Source: Octopus sinensis
Taxonomy: Eukaryota
Direction of reading: 5' to 3'
Assembly (NCBI RefSeq): GCF_006345805.1
Contig: NW_021835332.1
Location: 1 to 40,921 of the forward strand
Length of the DNA: 40,921 bases
Shown: positions 547 to 29,700 of the stretch, piece by piece
Layout of the letters: each line of letters opens with the position of its first letter
Position numbering within the stretch: position 1 is the stretch's first letter
The notes under the pieces: model-generated
Seen by the model: the letters and a program-made list of their open reading frames with translations, nothing else
Told to the model about the DNA's origin: nothing
Database searches by the model: none
Position numbers and translations under genes: made by a program

Positions 547-603
547 CTGCCACCACCAGTGGATTGCCTCCAAAAATAGAAGTAAAGGAAAATCAAAAGA
601 ACG
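547..603 (+). CDS. Cadherin exon A (57 nt, phase 1-1): xATTSGLPPKIEVKENQKNG, start of EC1
   Basis: Acceptor ttttttgttatgtcag, donor gtaagg. IEVKEN matches the EC-domain x(P/x)EN motif and the phase fits the next exon. Confidence 0.85.
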
Positions 604-730
604 GTAAGGAAAATTTTGTTTAATAGATCAAGTTAATTTTGCATCTTTTAAAAACACGATATAAATTTATTTCATAGGAAAACATCTAGAAAAGAGAGAT
701 AAGAATGATTAACTTCAGCTACACTATTAC

Positions 731-733
<3 letters not shown>

Positions 734-768
<35 letters not shown>
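734..768. repeat. (TA)n microsatellite
   Basis: Perfect TA run. Confidence 0.95.
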
Positions 769-771
<3 letters not shown>

Positions 772-2738
772 GAGGAAACATCAAGAAATATGTAAGTCTT
801 CTATATGAGATGTGTCTTGAATACCAACCCAGCTATAAATACTAAATACTGTCTCATAATACACCAGATTAACAAGGCAGAAAGCTACCTGCAAGACAGT
901 CATAATACCAATTCACTAGAATAACTCTCTGACTTTAATCCATCCAAATCAGTTGCTTTAATCTAATAAGTGAGAAACCAAGTGTGTTTACATTCAGAAT
1001 GTAAATATGGAAGCATTGAGAATTATGTAAACAAGTCTTCTAGCAATAATGTATCTCAAATGCCACTTCAGCCATAAATGATAGCTCATAATACATAAAT
1101 GTATGACATTGTATATGGCTAAATCAAAACTTACTACAAGCCTGTTGCAACATCCAAATAGTTTCCGTAAGAGATTTTTAAATAGAACTTCACACAGATA
1201 TATTGCTTTTTCAATCCTTCATTATTCAATTTAGGCAAACTGTGAAATGCACAGAAACAGACAATCATTCTAGCATGTGTAGATTAATGACTAACTGATG
1301 TGACTATATCAGATTTAAAGTCAAGGTCATTCATGCATGACATGATAGGTATGATGTTTAAAAATTTGGGTTTACCCTTATCATCATCATTGTCATCGTC
1401 ATCATCATCATCTTTTTCATGCTCCCATGGATTGGATGATAACCTCTCACCCTTCAGCACTTGCCATGACCCTTCACTTGCCAGGATACATGTACCAGAA
1501 GGGAAAGCTACCAATTTTTGTTATTTTGTATATCATCTACATGGGCTAATTTTTATTGTAGAAGTGAATGGGTGCATTCTTATTGTGCCACCAGCACTAT
1601 AGAGATTTTCGGCCAGGACTACAGAATTCTCTCTATCCTATATCTGATGTTAGTCAAAGTTACTGCTCACCTTGGTAGGTTGACTTCACTGTGGCTTGTG
1701 GAGATCACATATTCATTTCCTTTTATGTTTTTGACATGGTTTTTATGATCAAATGCCTTCCCACTGCCATCTATTTTACAGCATTGGTTGGGTGCATTTT
1801 ATTATGCTACCAGTACCAGGGCATTTATCTACCAATACAAAAGAGTCCCCTCATCACACACACAAACATGTACATGTGTATGTCTCTATAAAGATATGAT
1901 ACTGGATTATTTATTCATAAATCTTGAGTTCAGTGTAACAAAGAGCATTTCATTATTTATTTGGACTTAAGTTTTAAATAATAGACTCTACATATCTCAG
2001 TTCAACATCAAGATTATCTGTTAGATTATCTGATAATCTTAACTGCAATATACTATAGTTCTTCAAAGGGAAAATTTATTTCTTGTCTGCTAATGCCATA
2101 AAATCTGAAGCCTATTTTCAGTCATGTAGAAACAATATACCCATACACAAAAGGGAAAATAAACTACACAAACAAGGTCATACAATATTCATCAGAAAGA
2201 CCACAAATTTTAGCCAGAGGACAGTAGTTGAAGCAGTCTTTATACCAAATATCAAACCAGTTGCACAATAGAAAAGTATCAAATGAGGCATGGTAGTTGA
2301 ATATTTTTCATCTACATCTGTCACATGCATAACTCGTTTTTTTTAATGTCAACTGAAATGAAGGTTGTTGAAAATCAGTCATAATAATATTCGAAACAAA
2401 AGGCTTTAAATGTCTATGAGTTGTACTAGAATCAATAGCACAATAAACTGAAACCTTCAAAAATGACTAAAGCAGAACGAAAATACTCAGTGTACACATT
2501 GTGATCTTGGCTCAGTGTAATTCAGAAAACATTATTTTTTGGTAATTTAAGAAATGACTTATAAAAATGCAGTTAGCAAAAATACATGCTAATGTTTTAA
2601 TGTTTTTGATTCATAGTACTCAAAATAGTTTATAATCTTTAATCAATTAGAGAAGCACAGTGACTGTGCTGTGGGGTTAACATCCTGGGCTAATGACTGC
2701 TTGTATATGATTTCAAAATCTTCCTACTGGAACATCTT

Positions 2739-5497
2739 CATCATCATCATCATCGTTTAACGTCCGCTTTCCATGCTAGCATGGGTTGGACGATTTTGAC
2801 TGTGGGCTGGCGAACCAGATGGCTGCACCAGGCTCCAATCTTGATTTGGCAGAGTTTCTACAGCTGGATGCCCTTCCTAACGCCAACCACTCCGAGAGTG
2901 TAGTGGGTGCTTTTTACGGGCCACCAGCATGGGGGCCACTCATGTGGTACTGGCAATGACCACGCTCGAATACTTTTACACATGTCACCAGCGCAGGTGC
3001 CAGTAAGGCGATGTTGGTAACGAACACACTCGAATGGTGCCCTTCTACGTGCCACTGGCATGGAAGCAGTTGGCTGCTCTGTCAATGATCATGCTCGAAT
3101 GGTGCCCTTTAAGTGCCACTGGCACGGAAGCCAGTTAGCCGCTCTGTCAATGATCACGCTCGTATGGTGCTCTATGCACCCTGCTATCACGGACACCAGT
3201 CATCGAGTTTGATTTTGATTTTGATTTTGCTTTTGATTGATTTCACTTGCCTCAACAGGTCTTCGCAAGCAGAGATTTAGTGTCCAAAGAAGGAAAAGGT
3301 ACGCATAAGTGGGCTGGTTATGCCCCTGGCATAGGCCATGAGATTATGGTTTCATTTGGCATATTTCCAAAGGTCTCGGTCACTAGTCATTTCCTTGGTG
3401 AGGCCTAAAGTTCGAAGGTTGTGCTTCACCACTTCATCCCAGGCCTTCCTGGGTCTACATCTTCCACAGATTCCCTCAACCACTAGGGTGTGGCACTATT
3501 TCACACAGCTGTCCTCATCCATTCTTGCCACATGACCATACCAGCACAGTCGTCTCTCTTGCACACCACATCTGATGATTCTTAGGTCCAACATTTCTCT
3601 CAAGGTACACACTCTGTCGAGTATGCACACTGACATTACACATCCATCGGATCATACTGGCTTCATTCCTTGCAAGCTTACACATGTCGTCAGCAGTCAC
3701 AGCCCATGTTTCACTGCCATGTAGCATGGCTGTTCGTACACAAGCATCATACAGTCTACCTTTTACTCTGAGCGAGAAGCCCTTTGTCGCCAGCAGAGGT
3801 AAGAGCTCTCTGAACTTTGCTCAAGCTATTCTTATTCTAGCAGCTACACTTTCAGCACACCCACCTCCACTACTGACTTGGTCCCCTAGGTAATGAAAGC
3901 TATCCAATACTTCTAGTTTTTCTCCCTGGAATGTGGCAGAAGTTGGTCTCTGCGCATTTCCAGTGTTTATTGCTCCTGAGTATCTGCCACATACAAAAAC
4001 TATCTTCCCCATTAGCCTTCCTTTGATATTACTGCACCTCTTATGTGTCCATAGCTTACACTGGGTGCATCTTATAGAGTTTCTACCTACGCCTCTACTA
4101 CAGATTGAACAGGGCCATCTACCTGAAGGGATTTGTGGTTTGCCTGCCTTCCTATATATTAGGACTTTGGTTTTAGCTAGGTTGATTCTAAGGCCCTTCA
4201 ATTCTAATCCTTGTTTCCACACTTGAAACTTTGCCTCTAGTTCTGATAGTGACTCAGCAATTAGAGCAAGGTCATCAGCATAGAGGAGCTCCCAGGGGCA
4301 TCCTGTCTTGAATTCCTCCATTATTGCCTGGAGGACTATGATGAATAGGAGGGGGCGGAGGACTGAGCCTTGGTGGACTCCTACCTCTACCCTGAAGTCT
4401 TCAGTGTACTCGTTGCCAACCCTCACCTTACTTACAGCGTCCCTGTACATGGCTTGCACAGCTCTCACTAACCATTCATCTATCCCTAGTTTCCTCATTG
4501 ACCACCAGATAAGCGATCGGGGGACCCTGTCAAAGGCTTTCTCCATGTCAACGAAAGCCAGGTACAGGGGCTTATCTTTGGCCAGGTATTTCTCCTGCAG
4601 CTGTATTACCACAAATATGGCATCAGTGGTGCTTTTCCCTGGCACAAAACCAAACTATATCTCATCCAAGCTGGCTCTCTCCCTAATCAGTTGGGCTATA
4701 ACCCTCTCCGCAACCTTCATTACCTGATCCAACAGCTTGATACCTCTGTAATTATTTGTATCTAAAGCGTCACCTTTACCTTTGTAGCAGTTGACTATTA
4801 TGCTGCTACACCAGTCATTGGGTATAATTCCTTCGTGTATCACCTGGTTAACTATACGGGTGACTAGGCTATAGCCGACACTGCCAGATATTTTGAGCAT
4901 CTCTGCAGTAATTCCTGATGGGCCTGGGGCCTTCCCTGTCTTCATGCTTCTAATTGCCTTAGGAACTGTCAACTGAGATAGCTGGTTCCTCTGTTGGGTC
5001 GACATTTGGCAGACTCTCATTCTCCCATTCAGTTTCTTTATTCAGCAACCTTTCATAGTGGTGTCTCCAAACCTCTCTCTTTGCATCCTCATTCAGCGCA
5101 AGTGAACCATCATCTAGCTCCCCTTTGGGTAGTCTGATACAATTCCCTGCTACCACCGTTCTTCCAGTCCTTCCAAGCCTGTTTCTTTTGTCTAATAGCC
5201 CTGTCAACAACATTGTTCCACCACCAAGTTATTTTGGGTCGGGAGGGGACTTTGCACCATCCACAGATCTGGTCGGTGACTCTTAGCAGGTTGTTCCATA
5301 GGAACCTCCAGTAGTCTTCTATACCATGTGAAGCTATATCCCCTTCTATTTCGTCAAAGGGTTTGAGTAATATGTCCCTAAATCTCTTTCCATTTGCAGG
5401 ATCTTTAAGTCTTCAGACCCTTCTTCTCCTTGCCGGTCGTCTTCTGGGAATCCATTTAGCCCTGATCCTGAAGTCACTAACTACTAGTCTATGTTGC
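2739..5497 (-). mobile_element. RTE-clade LINE copy A: 5'-truncated and frameshifted, with RT domain, 3' UTR minisatellite and (GAT)n tail
   Basis: ORFs 3821-4645 (FVDMEKAFDRVP, HQGSVL, LLYADDLALIAES), 4655-5020 (KAPGPSG, NYRGIKLL) and 3515-3727 (MLHGSETW) are RTE ORF pieces. About 5 tandem 3' UTR units lie at 2908-3190. Confidence 0.95.
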
Positions 5498-5954
5498 AGG
5501 TTGCCTGTCCTATGTATCACATGACAAACACAGGACATATTTTCCTATAGCCCATATTTCATATTTTATACATATCCCCAATTTTTTCATTCACTAGAGT
5601 AGCTTGGGACTTTGGAAAAGAGTGTTTTATATTACTCAGAATATATGAAGCAAAGAATAACTAAAAGTCTGAAAACAATCGTAGACATTTAGGACAAACT
5701 TATGCAAATGTTTTTGACAGGTAAAGGGTTAAGCAAGGCACAAAATGTGTCTTGTTCCAGTTTGCTTGACTGGTAAAATCATTCTAGTAAGGGCATCCAA
5801 TTACAAAAAGAAATGTTTTCAATAAATGCCATCTTATCTTTTCTAGTATGCAAAAATTGATTATAAAACAGTAAAAATGAAAGAAAAACAAAATGCTGAG
5901 AATACCATGAATTTAATGCTATCATTTTTACTCATAGTAAATTTTCTTTTTCAG

Positions 5955-6130
5955 GCACTGTTGTTGCAACTGTTGAAGTGACTGGAAACAATTTCCCTAA
6001 ATTAACTTTAGTGGGAGATGATATACTGAAATATATAAAAGTAGTAGATAATCCTTCTTGTATTAATACTGCATCATGTAACAAGTTTGATTTGGTTACC
6101 GTAAAAGTAATTGACAGAGAAAAAGTTCCG
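5955..6130 (+). CDS. Cadherin exon B (176 nt, phase 1-0): EC1 core ending in VIDREKVP
   Basis: Acceptor attttctttttcag, donor gtatgt. Open frame GTVVATV...IDRE. Confidence 0.92.
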
Positions 6131-7284
6131 GTATGTACAAAACTTCTTGAAATAATTTCCACATGCTGACATTAATAAATAATGAAAATGAAATAAAATA
6201 AATAAAAAACAAAACAGCATTGTTGATAAGGGCATTTTCATTTATCTTTATTTATAAAACTTGTAGTCACTCAGTTGAAAATGGGATGAGACATAAAATG
6301 ATAAAAAGTTCATTGGTTAATTGAGATTATAGGCCCATTTGAGAGCACACTGTCTGAGAGTGGTGGTAGACTAAAGTAAACACAGAAGGTTTTGCACTGG
6401 TGACTATAAATGAGATGGGGAGGAAAGAGAATTTTGTACAAAATTTAGTCATGTCGACTGAAAAGTGTCAGATATGAGAATTCTTGGACATTAGTAAAGA
6501 TTTTCTTGATAACAAATGAGAAATCTCAGGTGCAATTTCGAAAGTGGAATATCTTGCAGATTGTATGAAGTCACAAGCGAAAATCAATTGTGAAGATTTC
6601 AGCTTTCCCTTGAATTGAGTTACAGTTTGAATAATTGCAGCAACAGCCTGGACCTTGCTAAAAGCATCTAAATATCCAGAAACTGGTTTAAAATCGAGCA
6701 GCATGTTATGTTTACTATTTCAAAAGTAGACTGTTTTTATCATGATACCAGTGATAGAGAGGTTGTTTTGAAGGACTTCGAACATCATCTTTCAGAGGAA
6801 GGTTCTTTTTCATTTTTGAGTAATGAAGCATCTAGGTGGTCTGCTTTATTGTAGAGATCATGTCTCTCTTGAGGTGAATCACTATTGTAGGAAGTATTAG
6901 GTTTACAGTATTTCCAGAGATATAGTGTAAAACAAAGTAAACTAGAAGTGGATTTGAAAATGAACCAATATTTCCTCAAGGACCAATAAAATGAATCTTA
7001 ACAAATAAAGTGTTGTATTAAAGAAAAGTGGTGTGAAAATGCAAAAGTATATTGGTATAGTGTATCAGATGAAGCATCAATAGCTCAGAGTTAGCTTAAA
7101 TTATTAAAAGGGAAAAGGCAGTGAATATGATTTGATTGGTTAGAAAGAAATGGAAAATAGTTGATCAAGAGAAAGAAGCATGACAAAGACTGTAAAAATG
7201 ATAAGAAACACAAAGTAGATATAATTTAACTGTAGTTCTGTAGTTGCAGGGTGTTGGTGAATAAAGCGTTATATATCATTGCCA

Positions 7285-7625
7285 GACAGCTGACTGGCTT
7301 CCGTGCTGGTGGCATATGAAAAAACATTCAAGCGAGGTCGTTGCCTGTGCCACTGGACTGGCACCTGTGCAGGTGGCACATAAAAAACACCATTTGAACG
7401 TGGCCGTTGCCAGTACTGCCTGACTGGCCCTCATGCCGGTGGCACGTAAAAGCACCCACTACACTCCTAGAGTGATTGGCGTTAGGAAGGGCATCCAGCT
7501 GTAGAAACTCTGCCAGATCAGATTGGAGCCTGGTGCAGCCATCTGGTTCGCCACTCCTCAGTCAAATCGTCCAACCCATGCTAGCATGGAAAGCGGATGT
7601 TAAATGATGATGATGATGATGATAT
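7285..7625 (+). mobile_element. RTE 3' UTR/tail copy (3 tandem units plus (GAT)n)
   Basis: Contains ggcgttaggaagggcatccagctgtagaaac...ccaacccatgctagcatggaaagcgg..taaatgatgat, the reverse complement of the copy A tail. Confidence 0.93.
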
Positions 7626-7833
7626 ATTCAGTATCTAGGCAGTGTGTAAGTTGCATTTATAGCTATACAGCCATGAATTTTACCATCATACTTTCACTAA
7701 ACAGTTGTTTAGTTCAGCAGTTTATTGTTTTAAATGAATTATTAGATTCATGGCCTTCTATTTATTTTTTCCCTTTTTTTGAGATAAGCATTATGTAATA
7801 CCTACTTTGAGTATCATTATGTATGATACTAGT

Positions 7834-8044
7834 TAAGGCAGTGAGCTGGCAGAATCATTACTAGACCTAACAAAATGCTTGGCAGCATTTCTTCCAGCCT
7901 CCAGATTCAAATTCAGCTGAAGTTGACTTTGTCTTTCGTCCTTTTATCATTGATGAGATAATTACCAGTTGAGCATTGGGGTTGATGTAATCGGTTAGCC
8001 ACCTTTCCCCTAAAATTTCAGGGCTTGTGTCTACAGTAGGAAGA
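7834..8044 (+). mobile_element. tRNA-derived (CORE-like) SINE with target-site duplication
   Basis: A-box-like gagctggcagaatc and decayed B-box gattcaaattc. Flanked by attatgtatgatact(a/g)gt at 7816-7833 and 8045-8062. Same family as 26441-26600 and 38188-38403. Confidence 0.85.
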
Positions 8045-8548
8045 ATTATGTATGATACTGGTATATGCATTATTTCTTTGTGGCTTTTATTGAGAATTTT
8101 GATTATATTTACAGAGGCATTTTCATTTGTTTTACTCTTACTAAAGTAATATTTGACAATTGCAAAAAGTATGGTAGGAAGATGAATAAAGTTAATGTTT
8201 TGTTGGAATATTTGAAAATGTGAGCCTGAGAAGATAAAAACAGGCAAAGAAGGGGTGCTTAAAGGAAGCATATCTGAGGAGGAAGGATTTCAAAATCTGT
8301 TTTGTTTGAAGTATAGGGTAAGTTAAGTTGGATGAGGTACTTTTAGCCAACTTGGTGAGAATCAGAGAGTGTGATATTATTAACAATGACATAGAGAGAA
8401 TATAACTTGATAATTGGGAGAAGAGTATTGTTGAATTAAGGTTTTGCTTATATTTTGCCTGTATCAGATATATGTACTGTTATTTATGTATTTATAATAA
8501 AACATTAATTTCTTGAATAGGAACATAATTCTTTGTATTATTTTGCAG

Positions 8549-8569
8549 AACGGATTTGTTGAGTTTACG
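8549..8569 (+). CDS. Cadherin microexon C (21 nt, phase 0-0): NGFVEFT
   Basis: ctttgtattattttgcag|AACGGATTTGTTGAGTTTACG|gtaaga. Supplies the expected strand between DRE and DG. Confidence 0.78.
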
Positions 8570-8694
8570 GTAAGAATATATACTTCTAATACTTAACTTT
8601 TTAAGAGTGGCCTGTTGTCATCATCATCTTCATTGTCATCATCATCATAATTATCGTCACCACCACCACCACCTTCCTCCTCCTCCTTCTCATC

Positions 8695-9130
8695 ATCATC
8701 ATCATCAGTAACATCTGTTGACCATGCTGGCATTCATATGATGGTTTGACCAGTGCTGGTAAGCTGAGGTACTGCACTAGACTCAAGTCTGATTTGGCAT
8801 GGTTTCTGTGACTGGATGCCCTTCCTAAAGCCAACCACTCTAAGAGTGTAATGGGTGCATTTATGTGCCACCAGCATGGGTGCCAGTTGCATGACACCAT
8901 ATCTGTCATGACTAAGATTCCACAGGACTTGATGGTTCATCTTCTCAAGCATATTGCCAAAAGTCTTGCTCATTTGTCATTGCCTCCATGAGGCCCAACA
9001 CTCAAAAGGTGCTTTTTACTTATCACATGCACAGGAGCCAGTTACATGACATCAGCATCAAACACATGATTTCACTTGGCCTGATGGGTTTTCTCCAGCA
9101 CAGCATATCACCAAATGTCTCAGTTATTAG
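8695..9130 (-). mobile_element. Degenerate RTE 3' end
   Basis: (CAT)n followed by ctggatgcccttcctaaagccaaccactc and decayed units. Confidence 0.85.
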
Positions 9131-9183
9131 CCATTGTCAGTAAGGTGAGAATTAACACCTTGTAGAGTTATATATATATATTT

Positions 9184-9535
9184 CATCATCATCATCATCA
9201 TTGTTTAACGTCTGCTTTCCATGCTAGCATGGGTTGGATGATTTGACTGAGGTCTGGCGAACCAGATGGCTGCACCAGGCTCCAATCTGATCCGGCAGAG
9301 TTTCTACAGCTGGATGCCCTTCCTAATGCCAATCACTCCGAGAGTATAATGGGTGCTTTTACGTGCCACCGGCACGAGGGCCAGTCAAGCAGTACTGGCA
9401 ACGACCACCCTCAAATGGTGCTTTTTATGTGCCACCTGCACAGGAGCCAGTCCAGCGGCACTGGCAATGACCTTGCTTGAATGTTTTTTCATGTGCCTCC
9501 AACACAAGTGCCAGTAAGGCGATGCAGGTAACGAT
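9184..9535 (-). mobile_element. RTE 3' UTR/tail copy (3 units)
   Basis: Closely matches the reverse complement of 7285-7625 by eye. Confidence 0.93.
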
Positions 9536-9542
9536 CATATAT

Positions 9543-9544
<2 letters not shown>

Positions 9545-9573
<29 letters not shown>

Positions 9574-10065
9574 GTTAACGTCCGCTTTCCATGCTAGCAT
9601 GGGTTGGACGGTTCAACTGGGATCTGGAGCCCGACGCTGCACCAGGCCAGTCAGATCTGGCAGTGTTTCTACAGCTGGATGCCCTTCCTAACGCCAACCA
9701 CTCCGAGAGTGTAGTGGGTGATTTTATGTGCCACCGACACAGGTGCCAGCGAGGCTGGCGAACGGCCACGCTCGGATGGTGTTTTTATGTGCCACCGACA
9801 CATGCCAGACGAGGCTGGCGAACGGCCACGCTGGATGGTGTTTTTATGTGCCACCGACACAGGTGCCAGACGAGGCTGGCGAACGGCCATCGATGGTGTT
9901 TTTATGTGCCACGACACCCAGACTGGCGAACGGCCACGCTCGGATGGTGTTTTTATGTGCCACCGCACAGTGCCAGACGAGGCTGGCGAACAGCCACGCT
10001 CGATGGTGTTTTTATGTGCAGGAGCCAGATGAGGCTGGCGATACGATCAGATGGTGATTTTTATG
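9545..10065 (-). mobile_element. Young RTE 3' UTR/tail copy with about 7 homogenised ~57-60 bp units
   Basis: CpG-intact tail. The unit gatggtgtttttatgtgccaccgacacaggtgccagacgaggctggcgaacggccacgctc repeats over 9716-10065. Confidence 0.93.
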
Positions 10066-10074
10066 TATATTATA

Positions 10075-19138: not shown

Positions 19139-19150
19139 AATAATAATGAC

Positions 19151-19182
<32 letters not shown>

Positions 19183-19197
19183 TAATAATAATAACAA
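19139..19197 (+). repeat. (AAT)n microsatellite, possibly a retroelement tail
   Basis: Near-perfect AAT run with a few AAC variants. Confidence 0.9.
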
Positions 19198-19639: not shown

Positions 19640-20514
19640 CATCATCATCATCGTTTAATGTCTGCTTTCCATGCTGGTATGGGTTGGACGGTTTGACTGA
19701 AAACTGGTGAGCTGTGGGGCTGCACTAGGTTCCAGTCTGATTTTGCAGGGTTTCTACTACTGGATGCCTTTCCTAATGCCAACCACTCAGAGAGAGTAGT
19801 GGGTGCTTTTTACGTGCTACTGGATGGGTGCCATTGACCTGACATCAGTATCACTCACGATTATGATCTTAATTGGCTTGACAGGTTAATATAAGCACTG
19901 TATATTGCCAAGGGTCTTGGTCACCTGACACTGCCTCCATGGGGTCCAATGCATGAATGTTGCTTTTTATATGCCTCCGGCATGGATGCCAGTCAGATGA
20001 CATTGGTATTGGTCACGACTCTGATTTCATTCGGTTCAACAGGTTTTCACAAACACAGCATATTGCCCAGTGATTGAAGGGTGCTTTTAATGGGCCACTT
20101 AAACGACATTGGCATCAGCCATGACTATGGTCTCACTTGGGTCTTCTCAAGCATGGCATATCGTCAAAGGTCTTGGTCATTTGTCATTATTTCTGTGAGG
20201 CCCAGCATTTGAAGATTATGCTTCACTACCTCATCCTACGTCTTCCTGGGTCTACCACTTCCACAGGTTCCCTCCATCATTAGAGTGCAACATTTCTTCA
20301 CACAGCTGTCCTCATCCATACACATCACATGACCATATCAGTGCAGTCATCTCTCTTGCACACCACATCTGATGCTTCTTATGTCCAACTGTTATCTCAG
20401 GAGCGCTTACACTCTGTTATGCATGCACACTGACATTACACATCCAATGGAGCATACTAGCTTCATTTCTTTCAATGTTGTTATTATTATTTGTTGTTGT
20501 TGTCATTATTATTA

Positions 20515-20558
<44 letters not shown>

Positions 20559-22070
20559 AGTGAGGGATGCGATGGCAGAATGCTTGAGGGACAAATCGCC
20601 GGGTTTGGATGGTCTATCCTATGAGCTTTACAATTGTATGCCAGACTTGTTTGGAGATGTCTTGGCAGCGGTGTACTGCAACTTGCAGCAAAACGGGAGC
20701 ACCCCCAGTTTTGTGAGCTGAGGAGCCAATACATTTCTTTCGAGCCTATGCATGTCCTCAGCAGTCTCAGCTCATGTTTCACTGCTGTGTAGTAAGGTTG
20801 TTCACACACAGGTATCATACAGTCTGCCTTTCATTCTGAGTGCGAGTTTCTTTGTTACGAGGAGAGGTAGGAGCTCTCTGAATTTTGCCCTATTCTTATT
20901 CTAGCAGGTATGCTTTCAAAGCATCCATTCCTGCTATTGATTTGGTCACTTAGGTAAAAGAAGCTATCGACTACTTCTAGTTTTCTCCCCTGGAATTTGA
21001 TGGAATCTATTTTCTGTACGTTTCTGATGTTTGTTGTACCTGTGCACCTTCAACACACAAAAACTATCTGCCCTGTTAACTTTCCTCTGATATTGTTGCA
21101 TCTCTTATGTGTCCATAACTTACACCAGGTACATCTTATGGAGTTCCTACTTATGCCTTTTCAACAGATCAATTGTGGCCATCTACCTTAAGGGATTTGT
21201 GATTTGTCCACCTTCCTACTTACTAAGACTTTGGTTTTTGCTAATTTAACTCTAAGGCCCTTTGATTCTAGACCTTGCTTCCACATCTGAAACTTTTTCT
21301 CTAGTTCTGGTAGTGATTCAGCTATAAGAGCAAAGTCATCAGCATAGAGGAACTCATAGGGGCGACCTGTCTTGAATTCCTCTGTTATCGCCTGGCGGAC
21401 TATGATGAACAAGAAGGAACTGAGGTGAACCCCTACTTGGTGAACCCTTACTTGTGCCCTGAATTCTTCTCTATACTCATTGCCAACCCTCACCTTACTG
21501 ACACCTTACTCCCTGTACATGGCTTGTATAGCTCTCATCAACCACTTGTCTATCCGTAATTTCCACATTAACCACCAGATAATGGATCAGGGGCCTTGTA
21601 AAAGGCTTTCTCCAAGTCAACAATAGCCAGGTACAGAGGTTTATCTTTAGCTAAGTATTTCTCCTGCAGCTGCCTTACCAGAAATATGGCATCAGCAGTG
21701 TTTCTCCCTGGCATCTCATCTAAACTAATTCTCTCCTTAATTAGTTGGGCTGTAACCCCCTCCGTGGCTTTTATCACTTGATCCAGCAGATTGATACCTC
21801 TGTAATTATTTCTATCTAAGGTGTTACTTTTACCTTTGTAGCAGCTGACTATGGTGCTGCTACACTGGTTGTTGGGTATGACTCCTCTGTGCATCACCTT
21901 ATTAACTATGTGGGTGACTAGACTAGCCTACACTGTCAAATATTTTAAGCATTACAGCAGTGATTCTTGAGGGGCTGAAGGGTTTCCTTGTCTTCATATC
22001 CTTAACTGTTTTATCTACCAAGTTACTGTCAATTCAGATAGCTGGTCCCTCAGTTGGTTCAACATTTGGC
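19640..22070 (-). mobile_element. RTE-clade LINE copy B: degenerate, internally deleted, interrupted at 20476-20731
   Basis: Tail at 19640. ORFs contain FLYADDFALIAES, VDLEKAF and NYRGINLL. Confidence 0.93.
20476..20731 (+). mobile_element. TSD-flanked insert: (TTA)n tract plus an L1/Tx1-type RT N-terminal fragment
   Basis: Flanked by catttctttcaa (20464-20475) and catttctttcga (20732-20743). 20558-20720 encodes VRDAMAECLRDKSPGLDGLSYELY, an L1-type KSPGxDG motif. Confidence 0.8.
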
Positions 22071-22229
22071 AAATAACAACAACAAAAATACGTTGAGTAG
22101 CTGTGTCTCATGGGCAGGATAAGCTTACTAGTCTTGTTTGATAATTGTCCTAGATGTATTATCTTCAACAAAATCATCCTTTGATAGGAACAGATAAAAT
22201 GTATAACTAAACAAAAAATACAAAATTCG

Positions 22230-24745
22230 CAATGTCTATTGACGAAAACACATACCAGATCAGTTGTCACTTGAATCAACAAGGGCTGCATCCCTCAAGG
22301 AGGAATCAGCCTGGGGTTGAAAAGTTTGCATTTGAAACAAGCTCTTCTCCAAATATGGACTTGAATAAGATTAATCTCAACCCAGTCCTTTCAAGTTCAG
22401 ATGCACTAAGAAGACAAAGATCTAAATGTTACAAATGAACCTGAGAAACTTACAAGTAAGTGATATATACATTCTATTGCTCATTGGGCAAATAATCTGA
22501 ATCCAAATACATGGTAAATTCTTTTAAGGTATGGAGAGAAAGAAATCTAGACATTAGACCAAACATGGATGAAAACAAACTTACAAATATAAGAGACATT
22601 CTTAGAAACAAATGACTAACAGATGCAGAATTAAATGAAATCAAGAGGAAAGTTGGAAAGATTTGAAAATATAAACACGAAGGAAGGATGAAAATGAATA
22701 CATGACAGTAGAGAAACCTTAAAACTTTGTGACCAAGTTGTCACCAGAAGAAATTGCACAAAAAAAAAAAAAATGAAAATATCAGAAATACCACAGAGCA
22801 AGTTTAAGTTGAAAGATATATTAACAATATGGATGAAGATATTTTTAGTCATGAGCTTTAAGATTGGCTAGAACCCTAACCCTAACCCTAATCCAAGCCC
22901 TAACCCTAACAAGAAATTTCTCAATGAACTTGGAAAAGTAAAAAACATTAGTATGAATGAAAGAAAATCATTGCAAAAACTGACAAACAATCCCAGGACA
23001 CATAAGAATTAGAAATCAGGCTGTTAAAGCAATAATTGAAGAGATGGAGCCTGATGTATCAGAACTGAATGAAGTTATATATGCCACAGTAATGGTAATA
23101 TAAAGGAAATGTGTGTCAATGAAAAGGCAAAAAGGACACTGCACTAAAAAAAAACAAAAAAAAACTGGAAGATAAAAATTGAGTAAGAAATTGAAATGAT
23201 GAGAGTAGAATTATCAATCTTGGATTAAATATATGTTAGCAAATCTGTCAAGATAAGGACAGAAGGTGATTAAGAAATATTAAGTAACTTCACTTCAAAA
23301 CATGATACTCCATCAATCAAAGAGACCCTGAAACAATAAGTACTGCTGAAAGCTCAAAGAATGAGATTTGATAAATGAAACAAACTTCACAGGCAACAGT
23401 TGTTTATGTCAGATGCAAAAGATGTTTTTACATGGAAATTGGGTTATAGACAAAAGAAACTCCTTCAATTCATGAGATTGATGAATTTTGGAAAAAAGAT
23501 AGAAGTACAGAAAATACCCATAATGAGAATGTAGAATGAATAAAGAACATAGAAGAAATGGTCAATAATTTAGAGAGGCTGACTTGGCCATTTCTTCAGA
23601 AATGATCATACTATTGCCTGCTTCTCCACTTCATACAAAATGCTCACCTCAATTTTGACTGAGACGATGTATAAATTTATGAACAAAATTCATTTCCCTA
23701 CTGAGCAGAAAGGTTGCCACTGTGGGTCTTATAGCTGTGAAGACCAACTTTAATTAATTAAACTATCATAACAAGAAAAGAAGTTTGAGAACTGCTTGGA
23801 TTTATTATTAAAAAGTGCATTTGATTGTGTGCCCCATTCATGAATTTTGAAAACTTTGGGTGTTCTGAGGATTTTCCCAGTAATATCAAATTCCTGAAAT
23901 ACATGTCTGTATAGAATACACATCTAACTTTGTCATACACTACAACTGTTAATATAAATTCCAGCAGCATAAGCATTAACTTTTTCAAGATAATTCATTT
24001 TCTCTTTCTTTTATTTTGAATTGCATTCAAACCACTAACTGTAGATTTCAACAAAAAATGGCTACAAAAAGATAGCAAAAACTACAACCATCTGTATTTT
24101 GTGGATGATTTGAAATGCATGCCGAAAATGACAACATGTTGGTAAGACTGTTAAAGAGAGTTAAGGGTTCAGTGATGAAGCAGGGGTAGGTTAGAGTTTG
24201 GGCTGGAAAAATGTGTGAAAGGGCAGAATGACAAGCACATATCCAATGGATAAAGATGTGGGTGTAGTAATTATGGAACAAGATCAAACCTAAAAGTATT
24301 TGACGTCAAGGAAGGCTAAAGTATTCATTATGCTAGCATGAAAGAAACAATCAAAAGGAACGCTACAGGAGAGTATGTGCTGTCTTAAAAACAGAGCTCA
24401 ACTCAAAGAATGAAATGTGTATCTGCTATAAATACCCTTACAATCCCAGTTATCACCTATGATTGCAATATCATAAATGGACCAATAATGAAAATGGACT
24501 AAAAAATGACTAAAAAGTTTGACCTATAATAAATTAGATCCTCAAAAGCAGATGTGGATCACCTTTATTTCTCTGGATGAAGTAGTAGAGTTAGAGGAAT
24601 GATCGCGCTTGAGCTGCTGTGCAAAATATCAAGTGTTGGGCTCAAACAATACCTTAAAACTTCAGATTACTGGATGTTGAAAACAGTTTCAGAATATGGA
24701 AGAAGAAAAGTTTGCGATAAATCTTGAAAGAAAGTTGGAAGTTTG
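22230..24745 (+). mobile_element. R4/Dong-clade non-LTR retrotransposon remnant 1
   Basis: Fragments across frames: VWRERN..NK*LTDAELNEIKRK, KETLKQ..LKAQRM, EQKGC..GSYSCEDQLLIN, KSAFDCVPHS and FVDDLK, matching the R4-clade ORF order. Confidence 0.85.
22872..22910 (-). repeat. Interstitial telomere-like (TTAGGG)n tract, about 6 units
   Basis: aaccctaaccctaaccctaatccaagccctaaccctaac on the + strand. Confidence 0.85.
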
Positions 24746-24756
24746 TGAAGATTAGG

Positions 24757-25135
24757 CATCATCATCATCATCATCGTTTAGCGTCCGTTTTCCATGCTAG
24801 CATGGGTTGGACGGTTCAAATGGGGTCTGTGAAGCCGGAAGGCTTCATCAGGCCTAGTCAGATCTCGCAGTGTTTCTACGGCTGGATGCCCTTCCTAACG
24901 CCAACCATTCCGTGAGTGTAGTGGGTGCTTTTTACAGGTGCCAGACAGAGCTGGCAAAGAGCCACGAACGGATGGTGCTTTTTACGTGCCACCGGCACGG
25001 GGGCCAGGCGAGGCTGGCAATGGACACGAACGGATGGTGCTTTTTACGTGCTACCGGCACGAGGCCAGTCGGGGCGGCGCTGGCAACGGTCACGAACGGA
25101 TGGTTCTCTTACATGCAACCGGCACTGGTAACACA
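24757..25135 (-). mobile_element. RTE 3' UTR/tail copy (4 units)
   Basis: (CAT)n, CpG-rich tail, units anchored on cgaacggatggtgctttttacgtgc. Confidence 0.92.
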
Positions 25136-25542
25136 TCTGCAACATGTACACTGAAAATTATGGTCATTCTGAAATTGAGGGTAATGTTGGTGAAAAATGG
25201 TCAACAGAAACTGTGCCCCAAATGGGAACAAAAACCACTGCACTGGTGGTATGTTCTCCATAGCAAAAAATTTTATATAAAATCAAAATTTCACCCATGT
25301 TGCTGATTTCTGGACTAAAAACAGAGTGAGGACTTCATTGTGGTTGCACAAAATCAGTTTCTTTCAACATACAACTTTCAAGTGAATGAGATCAGAAATG
25401 TAACAGACCCAAAGTGTTGATTTTGCAATGAGTAAATCGAGATCATTGAACACTCTGTTTCAGGCTGCAAAGTATTGGTTCCCCAGAAGTATAAAACTGG
25501 GCATGATTGAGTAATTTTTACACACACACACATACATATATA

Positions 25543-26437
25543 TAAGGGGGTACCCGAAAGTAACTGGAAACATTCTCTGTGGGACAAGCCCACTGTAGTT
25601 CAGACTTCTGCCTCTAGAAGCCACTTGATGTAATCCTCAAGCACGTGTATGCTGGGCAGCGTCGTTGAGTGTAGTCCTACTGCCATGTGGTGTGTCTTTG
25701 TTTTTCAGTGCTTCTTCCCTGTGCATTAATCTTTGTGAAGGCTGAAACGAAGGACAGCATGCTTCCATGAAATTCTGTTTTCTACTGGGGAAATGGCTGC
25801 CAAAACAGTTGTTATGCTTCAAGTAACTTACAAAGACACTGCCATGAGCAAAACACAAGTTTCCACTTTTTAGGAATGGTCATTTGTCACTTGAAAACCA
25901 ACTTCATTCAGGTATCCATTGACCTCCTGAATGATTAAAACCATCATGAAAATTCATGAACCGATCTTGGAATACCATCACTGACAGTTGACAAACTTGT
26001 TGATATGATTGGTGTGTCTTGGAGCTCCTGCAACAAATTTTGAGCAAGGAATTGCGAATGAAAAGAGTTGCAGCAAAATTTGTGCCTCACTTACTCTCGG
26101 AAGATCAAAAACAGTCACAACTGAATCCATGTCATGAACTGAAAGAATATTTGGAAATTGATCCAGACCTTTTTTTTTTATTTTGAAGGTCATCACTGGT
26201 GATGAATCTGGTGCTATGGAATTTGCAGATGTAGAAGAGGTGAAGTGAAGAACAACAGAGGTTTAAAAGGCATCATTTTGCAAGAGTTCCAGCACTGCTT
26301 TGAACAGTGGAAAATGCATCTGGAATGATGCATTGCTTGAAATGGAGAAGAGTTTGAAAGTGATCAAAGTGTAAACATATAGAACTGTGTGAATAAAATA
26401 ATATTGCAAAATTCTGGCTTTTTTGGGTACCCTCACA
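25543..26437 (+). mobile_element. Internally deleted mariner element with both TIRs
   Basis: TIRs gggggtacccgaaagtaactggaa and ttctggcttttttgggtaccctc. Peptides MKFCFLLG, KRVAAKFVPHLLSEDQKQ and KVITGDES are present; most of the catalytic domain after the first D is missing. Confidence 0.9.
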
Positions 26438-26440
26438 TAT

Positions 26441-26600
26441 ATTATTTTCTACTCTAGGCACAAGGCCCAAAATGTTGAGGAAGTGGGGCAGTAATTAGAT
26501 CGATCCAAGTATGCAACTGGTGCCTAATTTATCGTCCCAGAAAGGCTAAAAAACAAAGTTAATCTCGGCGGAATTTGAACTCAGAACGTAAAGACAAACA
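26441..26600 (-). mobile_element. CORE-like SINE, 5'-truncated
   Basis: ttttctactctaggcacaaggccc...ctcggcggaatttgaactcagaacgtaaagac matches 38188-38350. Confidence 0.85.
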
Positions 26601-26625
26601 TATATATTACAACAGCCTTCTATTT

Positions 26626-26762
26626 TCATCTACCAAATTTACTCACAAGACATTGGACAGTCTGAATATTATAGCAGAAGACTAAGGGCTGCCCAGTAGG
26701 ACTAAAACCAAAATTATTTTGTTGTGAAATGAACTATTTAACTTCATAGCCATGCCTGCACC
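26626..26762 (-). mobile_element. Highly decayed tRNA-like SINE head, second family
   Basis: Weak A-box-like tggctatgaagttaa and B-box-like ggttttagtcct on the minus strand. Family assignment rests on recall only. Confidence 0.35.
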
Positions 26763-26829
26763 TATGCATACAAAGATCACTTAATAATCAGTTAAATCAT
26801 AACTGAAAACTCTAGGATGAGAAAAAAGT

Positions 26830-29280
26830 GTCAGGTCTTGGTATAGGTTGATTGGTATCCAGAAGGCTTTTATAGTGTTCTCAACTCATGGATTCTTGAA
26901 ACATTAGCCAATCACAAGTGAATACACCAATCATGTGAAATGAATGAGAAATAAATTTGGAGATTCAAACAGAAGAGGTAAACATAAAAATGAACTACAT
27001 TGCTGTCAGAAGAAGAATATTTATCGTAGACTCTCTGTCCTCATACCTTTTCTGCATGGTATTGTTCCTCTGGAATAAATGCTAAGCCAGACTGACTATG
27101 GGTATAAGTATTTCGATAACAACTTTCTGTTATATATTAACTCTTAACATTCTATACAACATGAAACAAATAGGACCAAACCATCTTCGTTTGCATTTGT
27201 TGTAAAGAAGGTTATGAACTCTCTAATCGAAGAAAATCATTTATGTTTTGCAATGTTTGTTATTAGCATCAACCCAATGTGTTGCTGAATTTTTGTGATT
27301 TTTTCCTAGACTCTGTTTTATAGAAACTTATTTTAAAAATGGTTATGGCAGATAAGTTTTGAAGGTGATAACTAGAGGAATATATCTCTTTCATGCACAC
27401 TCAATATCTGACTTTGATCTGTCTAAATTTTCATTGAGTAACTTGAACAAAATATTATCTGAAGAATGTTTAGACAGTGAGCCTTTTGTTTTGTTGAATA
27501 TCTTTCTCAATTTTTTCTTCTTGTGATTTCAACAGTACAACTAAGAAGCTATAAGGATCTATCACTTTCTTCTAATGCTTTGAAATTTGGGCAGACTTGG
27601 GTATATTTATCATTGGGCTAACAATAATGAACTTAAAAATCTGCTGGAAAATGCACGTATTTTGTTTGTGATATTTGTATGCCCATATTTATTACCAATA
27701 TCTTTCTTTTCATCATTTTTTAAATATTGTATCTGTTTTCAGTTAATATTATGATATTAATTAACAATCTCATTTGTATACATAAAATTCAACACAAATA
27801 AGACTAAGTCTTTTCTACAATACTGTCTATCTTGACAATAATCTAGCCATAATGAAAGACTTATAAACATTTGAATAAACAAACCCATTTGCAAATATGT
27901 TCTGCTCAGTTATTACAGCACTGAGATTTTAACTTTGAAAAGTTTCAATGCAATGTTAAAAGTTAATGTACTCAAGCTGTATTCTGCACATGAAAAGCAA
28001 GAAACCTTGCATGTGAGACATGGTGTACAGCTTTAATATGGAGATTAGTACAAAATACCTTTTAAAACAATGTACCAAAGCCACCTAAAAAGTGAGGGAA
28101 TATATAAAATATAGACATACCATATTATACCTAAATAAATGTTAAATTGAGACAGATTTATAATTAGCAGATAACTTGCTATGTACAAATGAAAGAAAAT
28201 GTTAGGGTAGAATATTACAAATTTATTAGATTAATTCTTAAAAAAGTTCATGCACATCAATACTTTTGCTGTATTGGTAATTAGTTATAGCTTAATATTC
28301 TCAACTGGATGCTAAATGACTTGGTTAGACCAGACTGGAAATAATGATTTGTATTTAGAATATGCCACTCAAAATCTGACATACGAATATTATATTCACC
28401 ATGAATACAGGGATGTAGGGTATTATGCATGTAGAAAACTATTATAAGATATCAAATGTGGGACTACAAAAGTATTTAAAAATAAAGGAGACTAATACAA
28501 AGGGTGACAAAAGATGAACAAGAATAAAAGCAAAACTGCTTTTTGTTTCTTATCAGATCATTAACTACAAAATTGAGGTTGAAATAACCTTCAGCTGTGA
28601 GGATGATAGAAAAATAACAAGAGATATTGTGGAAACAAAAAGTTCAAAATGGAGGTAGAGAACTAGCATGATAAAATGATGCAAAGGAAAGACACTACAT
28701 GGCCAATAGATGAAAAGGCTGAAAAGAAGAAAGAGGACAATAAATAATAGGGAAAACTCAGGACTGGCTGAGAAGCTTAGGACTTACAGCTGAGACTAAA
28801 TTGTTTTTGATTTGTGGCACAAGAACAAAGCAACACACCAAAAACTGCAAAAACTTGTAACGAAGTTGGAAATGTAAAATATGTGGAGGTTGTAAAGAAA
28901 TAATTAGTTCAGTCTATGACAAAAGGGAATATATGCATACCTGACAGAGTGGAGGTTTCATACATTTGACATTATGCCATTATTGTGAAATCATTGAAGG
29001 AAAGACGTGGTGCAAATCTACACTACAAAAGGATTCTACAGAAGGTGAAAGTGACTGTACATATAGATTTACACAAGCAGTGATATTAAGTTAAATAACC
29101 CCAAGAAAGAAGAAAAAACAAAAAGCAAAAAGGCATCTAACAGAAAGAAATAAGGTCACTTTCCAAGTATGAAGACATACAAGAAGAGATGTCTATAAGT
29201 ATAATGTGATTGAAAACAAACAATCCCCCATAATATCAGCAACCTTGAGATAATACAAAGAATAGATGCATGATGAATAC
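26830..29280 (+). mobile_element. R4/Dong-clade remnant 2, very degenerate, RT piece through the restriction-like endonuclease region
   Basis: QKAFYSV..SWILETLA (~26860), NTFAVLVISYS (~28260), WLRSLGLTAET (~28765), KCKICGGCKE (~28870) and LSKYEDIQEE (~29160). The 27110-28000 interval is unresolved. Confidence 0.7.
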
Positions 29281-29297
29281 ATAACCAAAACACCAGA

Positions 29298-29330
<33 letters not shown>

Positions 29331-29580
29331 ACATGCTCATGCTATATACAGAAATCTCACTACTATGTACCGCATACATATTATATGGAACACTTAATGC
29401 AATGTAAGACAAATTAAACAAATCATTGCATGTACTTTAAGGCAACCAGGACTGTGGTTGATTGTGCCTTGAAAGCAAATTAAAAAAGACTACTGAAATA
29501 TTAATAATGATTAACAAGTAAATACACACATTATTAAACAAATAATGAAACTTAAATATTTCATTTTCTTTTACTTGTAG

Positions 29581-29700
29581 AATTCAAAAGGAATTGAAGA
29601 CTACATGAAAATTGAAGATAAATATAATGGTTCCATCACAGTAGTAAAAGCACTGGACTATGAAACAAGAAACTTTTTTGAATATACAGTACAAGTATTT
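29581..29700 (+). CDS. Cadherin exon G (120 nt, phase 0-0): NSKGIEDYMKIEDKYNGSITVVKALDYETRNFFEYTVQVF
   Basis: Acceptor tcattttcttttacttgtag, donor gtaagt. Contains G.I.V...LDYE. Confidence 0.95.

What the first reader, a model, noticed from the sequence alone, without database searches (positions are those of the whole stretch)
547..29700. Hidden cadherin assembled from tiny exons, including 21-nt and 12-nt frame-preserving microexons
Seen: 569 coding nt spread over 29 kb. Every exon from C to G is phase 0-0 and a multiple of 3, so each can be skipped without a frameshift. Known: cephalopod protocadherins encode their EC repeats largely in one big exon, so this is a different, intron-rich cadherin class. 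Neural microexon programmes (Srrm3/4 eMIC domain) are a bilaterian feature. Inferred: this may be a mis-annotated or unannotated adhesion receptor whose ectodomain is tuned by microexon choice. The 12-nt PAGQ exon sits in an EC2 loop where skipping should be tolerated; the 21-nt exon supplies part of a strand, so skipping it could disable EC1.
Basis: partly seen in the sequence, partly recalled or inferred. Interest (0 to 1): 0.75.

Follow-up and report, generated by a model that had tools for sequence, protein, structure and literature searches.

The report
Annotated octopus cadherin fragment, tiny exons
The seven small exons are real, but they form an already annotated, scaffold-truncated front end of one copy of a large octopus cadherin family, and its two tiny exons look like ordinary constant parts of the protein rather than switches.

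Summary
The gene is not hidden. The window is the whole Octopus sinensis scaffold VCDQ01000372.1, and RefSeq XP_029657140.1 (201 aa) already uses all seven exons, both tiny ones included. That model is cut at both ends by the scaffold. Related proteins and two spliced mRNA contigs show the real product: a single-pass cadherin of about 1,800 aa made only of EC repeats, of the Cad87A / "cadherin-23-like" type, present as several nearby copies. It is not a protocadherin. The 12-nt PAGQ exon is identical in four loci and is present in every mRNA and gene model seen. In the closest limpet homologue both small exons are just parts of larger exons. The 21-nt exon is a 33-nt exon that has lost 12 nt in this copy only. 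No skipped form was seen, but RNA-seq could not be searched. Found in passing: exons A and B (first part of EC1) differ 7-8 times more than the introns from the O. vulgaris locus, and almost all changes alter the protein.

The parts
522..29712 (+). Span of the existing RefSeq gene model (product XP_029657140.1, 201 aa, 'protocadherin gamma-B7-like'). It starts at an ATG (523) inside the intron upstream of exon A and ends by reading 9 nt plus a stop codon into the intron after exon G.
   Evidence: sequence
547..603 (+). Exon A, 57 nt: start of the mature protein and EC1 strand A (ATTSGLPPKIEVKENQKN-G). It carries a 3-nt insertion (ACC) relative to the other copies. The signal-peptide exon that should precede it lies off the 5' end of the scaffold.
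5955..6130 (+). Exon B, 176 nt: most of EC1, up to the DRE calcium motif, with a 3-nt insertion (GAT). This is the fast-evolving exon: 15 of 173 aligned positions differ from the O. vulgaris locus, while the flanking introns are almost identical in four loci.
8549..8569 (+). Exon C, 21 nt (NGFVEFT): EC1 strand F in the model. It is 33 nt (NGFV.FTPEF[TM]) in the three other loci and in the mRNA contig L005. This copy has lost 12 nt between the direct repeats G[TA]GTTTAC.
13083..13178 (+). Exon D, 96 nt: EC1 strand G, the DENDNVPVF linker and the start of EC2. It is 99 nt in the other copies (3-nt deletion here).
16974..17060 (+). Exon E, 87 nt: EC2 strands A to C with the TATDFDENP calcium motif.
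18565..18576 (+). Exon F, 12 nt (CCTGCTGGCCAG, PAGQ): end of EC2 strand C running into a loop. The exon and 45 nt of intron on each side are identical in four loci. The same 12 nt occur in an mRNA from another octopus that is about 70% identical overall.
29581..29700 (+). Exon G, 120 nt: EC2 up to strand F (..LDYETRNFFEYTVQVF). The exon that completes EC2 (DG.F..NASVWIQV.DVQD.PPAF in relatives) is not in the window.

Best explanation
The window holds exons 3 to 9 (here called A to G) of one copy of an octopus-specific, locally duplicated family of large single-pass cadherins. They encode EC1 and about three quarters of EC2.

The full-length proteins have a signal peptide, roughly 14-16 EC repeats, one transmembrane helix and a tail of about 170 aa. 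They total about 1,770-1,850 aa. Their nearest named relatives outside cephalopods are Cad87A / 'cadherin-23-like' proteins.

The scaffold ends remove the signal-peptide exon on the 5' side and the rest of the gene on the 3' side. The existing RefSeq model therefore has an artificial start and an artificial stop.

The two tiny exons are ordinary pieces of the EC fold, set apart by extra introns that the closest Lottia homologue lacks. Exon C (33 nt in the family, 21 nt here after a 12-nt in-frame deletion) encodes EC1 strand F. Exon F (12 nt) encodes the turn after EC2 strand C.

Shown here: the exon structure, the identity with the annotation, the truncation, the family architecture, the presence of both small exons in mRNA, and the Lottia exon fusion.

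Inferred: both small exons are included all the time, and this particular copy is a working gene.
For: - Identity with the annotation: 100% to XP_029657140.1, and the window is the whole scaffold VCDQ01000372.1.
- Matching O. vulgaris locus: window 387-39423 is colinear with locus L003 at 97-98% identity. There the signal-peptide exon lies about 3.4 kb upstream of exon A, and the annotated 3' exons lie beyond the point where the window ends.
- Gene continues downstream: in the O. sinensis paralogue L004, the exon after G, read in the correct frame, completes EC2 and begins EC3. Further EC exons follow.
- Full-length relatives: XP_036356631.1 (1262 aa), XP_036356629.1 (1876 aa) and CAI9718144.1 (1768 aa, with transmembrane helix and tail). 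The spliced mRNA contigs L005 and L006 encode about 1,840-aa cadherins with a transmembrane helix.
- Domain content: Pfam finds only cadherin-type domains.
- Nearest named relatives: the best non-cephalopod hits are 'cadherin-23-like' molluscan proteins and insect Cad87A-type proteins of 1,840-2,000 aa, at about 30% identity over at least 87% of the length.
- Small exons in mRNA: both are present in L005, and PAGQ is present in L006 and in all listed members of its 26-sequence cluster.
- Lottia: the homologue shares the intron positions and phases D|E, E|F and G|H, but has F+G as one 135-nt exon and B+C as one exon.
- Signs of a working gene: all four indels that distinguish this copy are in frame, there is no stop codon, and all splice sites are intact.
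- Structure: the AlphaFold2 model (pLDDT 85) gives two tandem EC folds.
Against: - No RNA-seq reads could be searched, so inclusion levels of exons C and F in O. sinensis are unknown.
- No assembled transcript of this exact copy was found.
- At the matching O. vulgaris locus, the exon that completes EC2 is absent for at least 24 kb downstream of G. The annotation there ends in two unrelated 3' exons (P0007). The copy could therefore be a partial duplicate or could make a short product.
- Orthology is mosaic. The introns match L003, but parts of exons A and B look more like other copies.
- Assignment to the Cad87A-type family rests on best hits and protein length, not on a tree.
Confidence: 0.8

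Rival explanations
1. One reading: exons C and F are alternatively included (neural, Srrm3/4-type) microexons whose choice tunes the adhesive ectodomain.
For: - Sizes of 12 and 21 nt, both phase 0-0, so skipping keeps the reading frame.
- Exon F is identical at all 12 nt, including third codon positions, between two octopus species whose coding sequences are about 70% identical. This kind of nucleotide-level constraint is often seen in regulated microexons.
- A TGC lies directly before the AG of exon C.
- A precedent exists among the structural matches: a PCDH15 EC1-2 splice-variant structure, 4xxw.
Against: - Every mRNA contig and gene model seen includes them. No form shorter by 4 or 11 aa was seen in the 26-member transcript cluster (15 members were listed).
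- PAGQ is kept at the protein level in relatives that are only 40% identical.
- In Lottia the same residues lie inside ordinary 135-nt and about 195-nt exons.
- Exon C encodes a whole core strand.
- There is no TGC in the 45 nt upstream of exon F.
Confidence: 0.1
2. The copy in the window is a dead or dying partial duplicate: a front-end cassette without the rest of the gene, possibly an assembly leftover. It would not be a functional gene.
For: - It sits on a 41-kb unplaced scaffold.
- No transcript of this exact product was found.
- The exon that completes EC2 is missing for at least 24 kb at the matching O. vulgaris locus.
- A 12-nt deletion shortens an EC1 core strand.
Against: - The 569 nt are open, and all 14 splice sites are intact.
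- All four copy-specific indels are multiples of three.
- Divergence is not uniform, as neutral decay would predict. Exons C to G differ at 0.9%, against 1.27% for introns. Exons A and B differ at about 10%, almost all of it amino-acid changing.
Confidence: 0.15
3. The locus makes a short secreted protein: signal peptide, EC1, a truncated EC2 and an acidic tail, as annotated for O. vulgaris CAI9718147/8.
For: The O. vulgaris models P0007 and P0002 at the colinear locus end in two 3' exons 13 to 14 kb after G. These models have no transmembrane helix.
Against: - Those models use a GT 4 nt downstream of the conserved G donor and shift the reading frame.
- EC2 would lack its last strand and the DxNDN linker.
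- The tail matches no Pfam family above its cut-off.
- Those exons lie outside the window, so they cannot be examined here.
Confidence: 0.12
4. The window is one unit of an array of multi-exon front-end cassettes (EC1 to the first half of EC3). The cassettes would be used alternatively with shared downstream exons, giving a diversity system.
For: - At least five distinct cassettes exist in O. sinensis, and at least three lie on one O. vulgaris chromosome, two of them about 0.7 Mb apart.
- RefSeq XP_036356629.1 chains two cassettes head to tail.
- Each cassette examined has its own signal-peptide exon.
- EC1 evolves fast, with dN/dS of about 5.
Against: - The two assembled mRNAs each carry a single cassette.
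- The chained model is probably a prediction artefact.
- At least two different sets of downstream exons exist.
- No junction evidence is available.
Confidence: 0.1

Closest known systems
RefSeq XP_029657140.1, 'protocadherin gamma-B7-like' [Octopus sinensis] (UniRef A0A6P7U4B6)
   Same: It is the same gene on the same scaffold, with the same seven exons.
   Different: The model adds an artificial MNIFFVMSA start, from an ATG in the upstream intron. It also adds an artificial VSI-stop by reading into the intron after G. Its name is misleading, because this is not a gamma protocadherin.
Octopus family members XP_036356629.1, XP_036356631.1 (O. sinensis) and CAI9718144.1, CAI9718139.1, CAI9718147.1 (O. 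vulgaris), variously named 'protocadherin Fat 4', 'CELSR2-like' and 'cadherin-23-like'
   Same: They share the same signal peptide and the same exon set A to G, including PAGQ (PADQ in one) and the small exon C. Identity over EC1-EC2 is 78-89%.
   Different: They continue into about 14-16 EC repeats, a transmembrane helix and a tail. Exon C is 33 nt and exon D is 99 nt. Exons A and B differ at many amino-acid positions.
Invertebrate Cad87A / 'cadherin-23-like' cadherins of about 1,850-2,000 aa (e.g. Carabus Cad87A, Drosophila proteins named 'cadherin-23', Lottia LOTGIDRAFT_229249)
   Same: These are the best non-cephalopod matches, at about 30% identity over at least 87% of the length. They have similar length, a cadherin-only architecture and a single pass through the membrane. 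Lottia shares three intron positions and phases in the EC1-EC2 region.
   Different: The Lottia gene model lacks the introns that isolate exons C and F. No tree was built. That the Drosophila proteins of about 1,980 aa are Cad87A rests on my memory of that protein's length.
Vertebrate cadherin-23 and protocadherin-15 (tip-link cadherins)
   Same: Both are intron-rich genes for long cadherins. Their EC repeats are among the best sequence and fold matches. A PCDH15 EC1-2 splice-variant structure exists (4xxw), so splice-tuned cadherin tips have a precedent.
   Different: CDH23 has 27 EC repeats and about 3,350 aa (from memory), against about 14-16 repeats here. The structural matches are generic for tandem EC domains: CELSR1 and the gamma protocadherins score equally well.
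Cephalopod protocadherin expansion (168 multi-exonic protocadherin genes in O. bimaculoides, about 120 of them clustered; Albertin et al. 2015 as cited in PMC6339937)
   Same: It is a lineage-specific, locally duplicated set of cadherin-superfamily genes in octopus.
   Different: Protocadherins are much shorter proteins than this family, which has about 14-16 EC repeats.

Membership tests
Cadherin superfamily | Tandem EC repeats of about 110 aa with calcium-binding motifs (DRE, DxNDN, DxD) at the linkers | tested here: met
   Pfam PF00028 matches residues 110-188 at E = 2e-11. IDRE, DENDNVPVF, TATDFDENP and LDYE are present. The AlphaFold2 model shows two beta-sandwich domains that match solved tandem EC structures at E = 1e-9.
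   EC1 and part of EC2 alone are split over seven exons. Full-length relatives are about 1,770-1,850 aa, with 10-13 Pfam-detected EC repeats.
Fat / CELSR (names given to paralogues) | EGF and laminin-G modules after the EC repeats; for CELSR also a GAIN domain and seven transmembrane helices | tested here: not met
   Pfam finds only cadherin-type families in P0157, P0016, P0276 and P0161. The mRNA contig L005 and P0276 show one transmembrane helix and a short tail.
Cad87A / invertebrate 'cadherin-23-like' cadherins | About 1,850-2,000 aa, EC repeats only, single pass; orthology shown by tree or reciprocal best hit | tested here: inconclusive
   Best non-cephalopod hits, protein length and architecture agree. 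Three intron positions are shared with the Lottia member. No phylogeny or reciprocal search was run.
Vertebrate cadherin-23 proper | 27 EC repeats, about 3,350 aa | tested here: not met
   Family members are about 1,770-1,850 aa.
Microexons (size definition) | Exon of 3-27 nt (some authors allow up to 51 nt) | tested here: met
   Exon F is 12 nt in all loci. Exon C is 21 nt here but 33 nt in every other copy, so it counts only under the 51-nt definition elsewhere.
Regulated neural (eMIC/Srrm-dependent) microexons | Alternative, neural-enriched inclusion that depends on Srrm3/4 | not testable with these tools
   No RNA-seq read search was available. Indirect evidence: the exons are included in all mRNA contigs and models seen.

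The most novel reading that the evidence does not exclude
The window is one unit of an octopus-specific local array of multi-exon front-end cassettes of a Cad87A-type cadherin. Its first EC domain (exons A and B) would be under diversifying selection, while the surrounding introns are kept alike by gene conversion. That would make it a second, intron-rich cadherin diversity system beside the octopus protocadherin expansion. Cassette choice or rare skipping of the tiny exons might add further variety.
Probability: 0.2. Interest if true: 0.6.

Novelty: already known. Interest (0 to 1): 0.25.

Why it matters
As submitted, the finding adds little. The gene is in RefSeq with exactly these exons, tiny ones included.

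Three things are still worth keeping:
- **Annotation quality.** Several public models of this family are wrong. They are truncated by scaffold ends, split by a one-base homopolymer error, chained across two cassettes, or misnamed as gamma protocadherin, Fat4 or CELSR2.
- **Origin of the tiny exons.** The 12-nt and 33-nt exons appear to be set apart by extra introns inside older, larger exons. The closest Lottia homologue lacks those introns, although only this one outgroup was examined. That argues against reading small size and symmetric phase as a sign of regulation.
- **Fast evolution of EC1.** Exons A and B change 7-8 times faster than the introns, almost only at amino-acid-changing sites, in two independent locus pairs. 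This is the pattern of a recognition surface under diversifying selection and deserves a proper test.

Tried and rejected
- **Paralogue DNA not retrievable.** Locus look-ups for P0002, P0003 and P0158 found nothing on record. For P0016 and P0159 the gene range was too long for DNA to be returned. I therefore could not map the O. vulgaris cluster or prove which downstream exons follow the window's copy.
- **Exon that completes EC2.** I searched for it in the window, L002 and L003 with tblastn and blastn and did not find it.
- **Family assignment by structure.** The profile search against PDB sequences and the Foldseek search gave only generic tandem-EC matches (CELSR1, gamma protocadherins, CDH23, PCDH15, Fat4). 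They do not discriminate between families.
- **Whole-library search.** The ranking is dominated by giant multi-EC proteins through summed scores. Only the two hits colinear from the N-terminus (P0016, P0071) were informative.
- **1835-aa versus 1845-aa transcripts.** I checked whether this reflects a skipped small exon. It is only a shorter N-terminal start.
- **Protein-level evidence.** None of five UniProt ids of the family occurs in the supplements of the O. vulgaris skin-mucus proteome paper.
- **Literature.** A search on octopus microexons found nothing on this gene. A search for a Cad87A/Cad74A classification was unproductive. The species behind SRR29271463 could not be identified.
- **Other content of the window.** Pfam on open frames in the introns gave only a weak reverse-transcriptase fragment. 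There are no tRNA or Rfam hits.


Full report
**What the window is.** The window is A+T-rich (31-44% G+C), and about 38% of it is repeated within itself. It is the complete 40,921-bp scaffold VCDQ01000372.1 of the Octopus sinensis assembly GCA_006345805.1.

| Exon | Coordinates | Length (nt) | Note |
|---|---|---|---|
| A | 547-603 | 57 | |
| B | 5955-6130 | 176 | |
| C | 8549-8569 | 21 | NGFVEFT |
| D | 13083-13178 | 96 | |
| E | 16974-17060 | 87 | |
| F | 18565-18576 | 12 | PAGQ |
| G | 29581-29700 | 120 | |

They total 569 nt. All have AG acceptors behind pyrimidine tracts and GT donors. The spliced frame is open. C to G are phase 0-0.

On sequence alone the tiny exons are weak calls. There are 32 open AG-12nt-GT candidates in intron E-G and 16 AG-21nt-GT candidates in intron B-D. 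Exon F is nevertheless the only 6-51-nt candidate on the whole strand with a consensus donor, a strong pyrimidine tract and YAG. Pfam recognises EC2 at E = 2e-11, cut at profile position 73 of 93. EC1 is too divergent for a significant hit.

**The gene is already annotated.** The spliced peptide is 100% identical to XP_029657140.1, 'protocadherin gamma-B7-like', 201 aa, whose gene spans 522-29712 of this scaffold. That model contains both tiny exons. It begins at an ATG (523) inside the intron before exon A (MNIFFVMSA...) and ends by reading into the intron after G (...VQVF-VSI-stop). For the exons in question it exists.

**The model is a fragment.**
- Window 387-39423 is colinear at 97-98% identity with an O. 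vulgaris locus, L003 (OX597815.1, 127.89-127.99 Mb), which carries the gene for CAI9718147/8.
- At L003 a signal-peptide exon (MLSIIFIGLLLMLGTV.A) lies about 3.4 kb upstream of exon A. The annotated 3' exons lie beyond the point where the window stops.
- In the O. sinensis paralogue L004 (CM016860.1), exon G has a T5 run instead of T6. This frameshift made RefSeq read the next exon out of frame.
- In the correct frame that exon is DEMFTANASVWIQVKDVQDMPPAF|IHSCCVEKIKENSNK. This is the end of EC2 and the start of EC3. More EC exons follow.

**What the family is.**
- A whole-library search found two proteins colinear from the N-terminus. One is XP_036356631.1 (1262 aa). The other is a 957-aa product of a 5.5-kb spliced transcript contig, L005, from run SRR3401912, an octopus metatranscriptome according to PMC11662614.
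- L005 encodes about 1,840 aa once a homopolymer frameshift is allowed for. It has a transmembrane helix and a tail of about 170 aa.
- Further members are XP_036356629.1 (1876 aa), CAI9718144.1 (1768 aa, complete), CAI9718139.1 (1402 aa), and 1,843-1,845-aa transcripts that are 40% identical (L006).
- Pfam sees only cadherin-type domains, with 10-13 EC repeats detected and no EGF, laminin-G or seven-helix modules.
- The best non-cephalopod matches are 'cadherin-23-like' molluscan proteins and insect Cad87A-type proteins of 1,840-2,000 aa, at about 30% identity over at least 87% of the length.
The RefSeq names (gamma protocadherin, Fat 4, CELSR2-like) are misleading.
- O. sinensis has at least five distinct front-end cassettes: the window, L004, XP_036356631.1, and two inside XP_036356629.1. 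O. vulgaris has at least three on one chromosome. The two that could be located lie about 0.7 Mb apart, and the third falls between them by accession order.

**The 12-nt exon F.**
- Exon F and 45 nt of intron on each side are identical in all four loci.
- L005 mRNA, about 70% identical to the spliced window sequence, carries the identical 12 nt between its E and G equivalents.
- L006 carries CCTGCCGGTCAG, which still encodes PAGQ.
- PAGQ (PADQ in one copy) is present in every model and transcript seen. The listed members of the 26-sequence transcript cluster show no form shorter by 4 aa.

**The 21-nt exon C.** Exon C is 33 nt (NGFV.FTPEF[TM]) in L002, L003, L004 and in L005 mRNA. The window lacks 12 nt between the direct repeats G[TA]GTTTAC. 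This copy also has +3 nt in A, +3 nt in B and -3 nt in D. All four indels are in frame.

**Comparison with Lottia.** In the closest Lottia gigantea homologue (LOTGIDRAFT_229249), the introns after D, after E and after G sit at the same codon positions and phase. But octopus F+G (132 nt) is a single 135-nt exon there, and B+C is a single exon of about 195 nt. The tiny exons are therefore pieces of older constant exons separated by extra introns, gained in the cephalopod line or lost in Lottia. They are not inserted optional cassettes.

**Structure.** An AlphaFold2 model of the 189-aa peptide, built with a 12-sequence alignment, has mean pLDDT 85.3. It shows two EC-like beta sandwiches. Exon C residues 80-84 form a strand, followed by strand 90-96. 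PAGQ (146-149) lies at the end of strand 142-146 and runs into a loop. Foldseek matches tandem EC structures in general. The inference that the loop is dispensable is weakened by its strict conservation.

**Regulated splicing could not be tested.** No read-level data were available. The indirect evidence (conservation, presence in all mRNAs, fusion into larger exons in Lottia) makes constant inclusion the more likely reading. I put regulated skipping at about 10%.

**Found in passing: fast evolution of EC1.**
- Between the window and L003, exons differ at 25 of 563 sites (4.4%) and introns at 478 of 37,516 (1.27%). Fisher P = 2e-7.
- The excess is confined to exon A (7/54) and exon B (15/173). 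Exons C to G differ at 3 of 336 sites.
- Nei-Gojobori estimates give dN 0.058 and dS 0.012. The independent pair L004/L002 gives dN 0.061 and dS 0.010.
- Around exon B, the flanking 100 nt of intron are almost identical in all four loci, while the exon is peppered with amino-acid-changing differences.
- This fits diversifying selection on the first part of EC1 together with homogenisation of the flanks. Short gene-conversion tracts between copies are an alternative source of clustered changes.
- Orthology is visibly mosaic. The counts are small: the binomial test of the synonymous deficit gives P = 0.06 and 0.03. This is a lead, not a result.

**Verdict.** The feature is real, described with correct coordinates, and already annotated. 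It is a scaffold-truncated piece of a member of a known kind of cadherin. The 'hidden receptor' claim is refuted, and the microexon-tuning idea is untested and disfavoured. Interest is low for the finding as given. The EC1 divergence and the cassette array add moderate interest.

Noticed in passing
window 547-603 and 5955-6130, compared with L003 44869-44922 and 51622-51794: Exons A and B differ from the colinear O. vulgaris locus at about 10% of sites, against 1.27% for introns. Almost all changes alter the protein (dN/dS about 5). The same pattern appears in the independent pair L004/L002. The intron flanks of exon B are nearly identical in all four loci. Possible explanations are diversifying selection on EC1 or patchy gene conversion.
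   Followed up: partly
L004 75428-75544 and 92983-93105 (O. sinensis CM016860.1): A T5-versus-T6 homopolymer difference in exon G shifts the frame of RefSeq XP_036370914.1/XP_036370919.1. As a result, the real exon for the end of EC2 and start of EC3 is translated as nonsense, and the gene is split from its downstream EC exons, which are called as a separate model.
   Followed up: partly
P0157 = XP_036356629.1 (O. sinensis), residues about 40-297 and 298-556: This RefSeq model chains two complete front-end cassettes (exon A through the first half of EC3) head to tail. That shows tandem cassette duplication in the genome. The chaining itself is probably a prediction artefact.
   Followed up: no
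L003 74887-74890, 87529-87651, 88664-88723 (O. vulgaris): The O. vulgaris models CAI9718147/8 reach two unrelated 3' exons through a GT 4 nt downstream of the conserved exon G donor. The product is a 273/281-aa protein with no transmembrane helix. This is either a short secreted isoform or an annotation artefact.
   Followed up: no
L007 1942-6303 (Lottia gigantea KB202953.1): The closest Lottia homologue shares three intron positions and phases with the octopus gene. It has octopus F+G and B+C as single exons, so the introns that isolate the two tiny exons are gains in the cephalopod line or losses in Lottia.
   Followed up: partly
window 3025-3200, 7279-7451, 9717-10019, 11279-11658, 24950-25125, 34622-34806 (and related copies at 2734-3138, 19639-19833, 40200-40395, 40637-40850): A multi-copy interspersed element, with up to about 19 overlapping self-matches, contains internal tandem units of 59-70 bp. 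It fills much of the introns in both orientations. No tRNA or Rfam match was found.
   Followed up: partly
window 14745-16067 (-), 32509-32832 (-), 21571-21927 (-): There are decayed transposon reading frames on the minus strand. Two look like mariner/Tc1 transposase remnants by eye. One is a weak reverse-transcriptase match (RVT_1, E = 9e-4, below the Pfam cut-off).
   Followed up: partly
window 734-771, 13714-13762, 40006-40091, 40884-40921: There are (TA)n microsatellites, one of which runs to the very end of the scaffold. This may be why the assembly stopped there.
   Followed up: no
L005 about 2880-2900 (Logan contig SRR3401912_3752): The octopus mRNA contig has a frameshift in a T8A7 homopolymer run, which splits one reading frame of about 1,840 aa into products of 957 and 869 aa. 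This is probably an assembly error.
   Followed up: no
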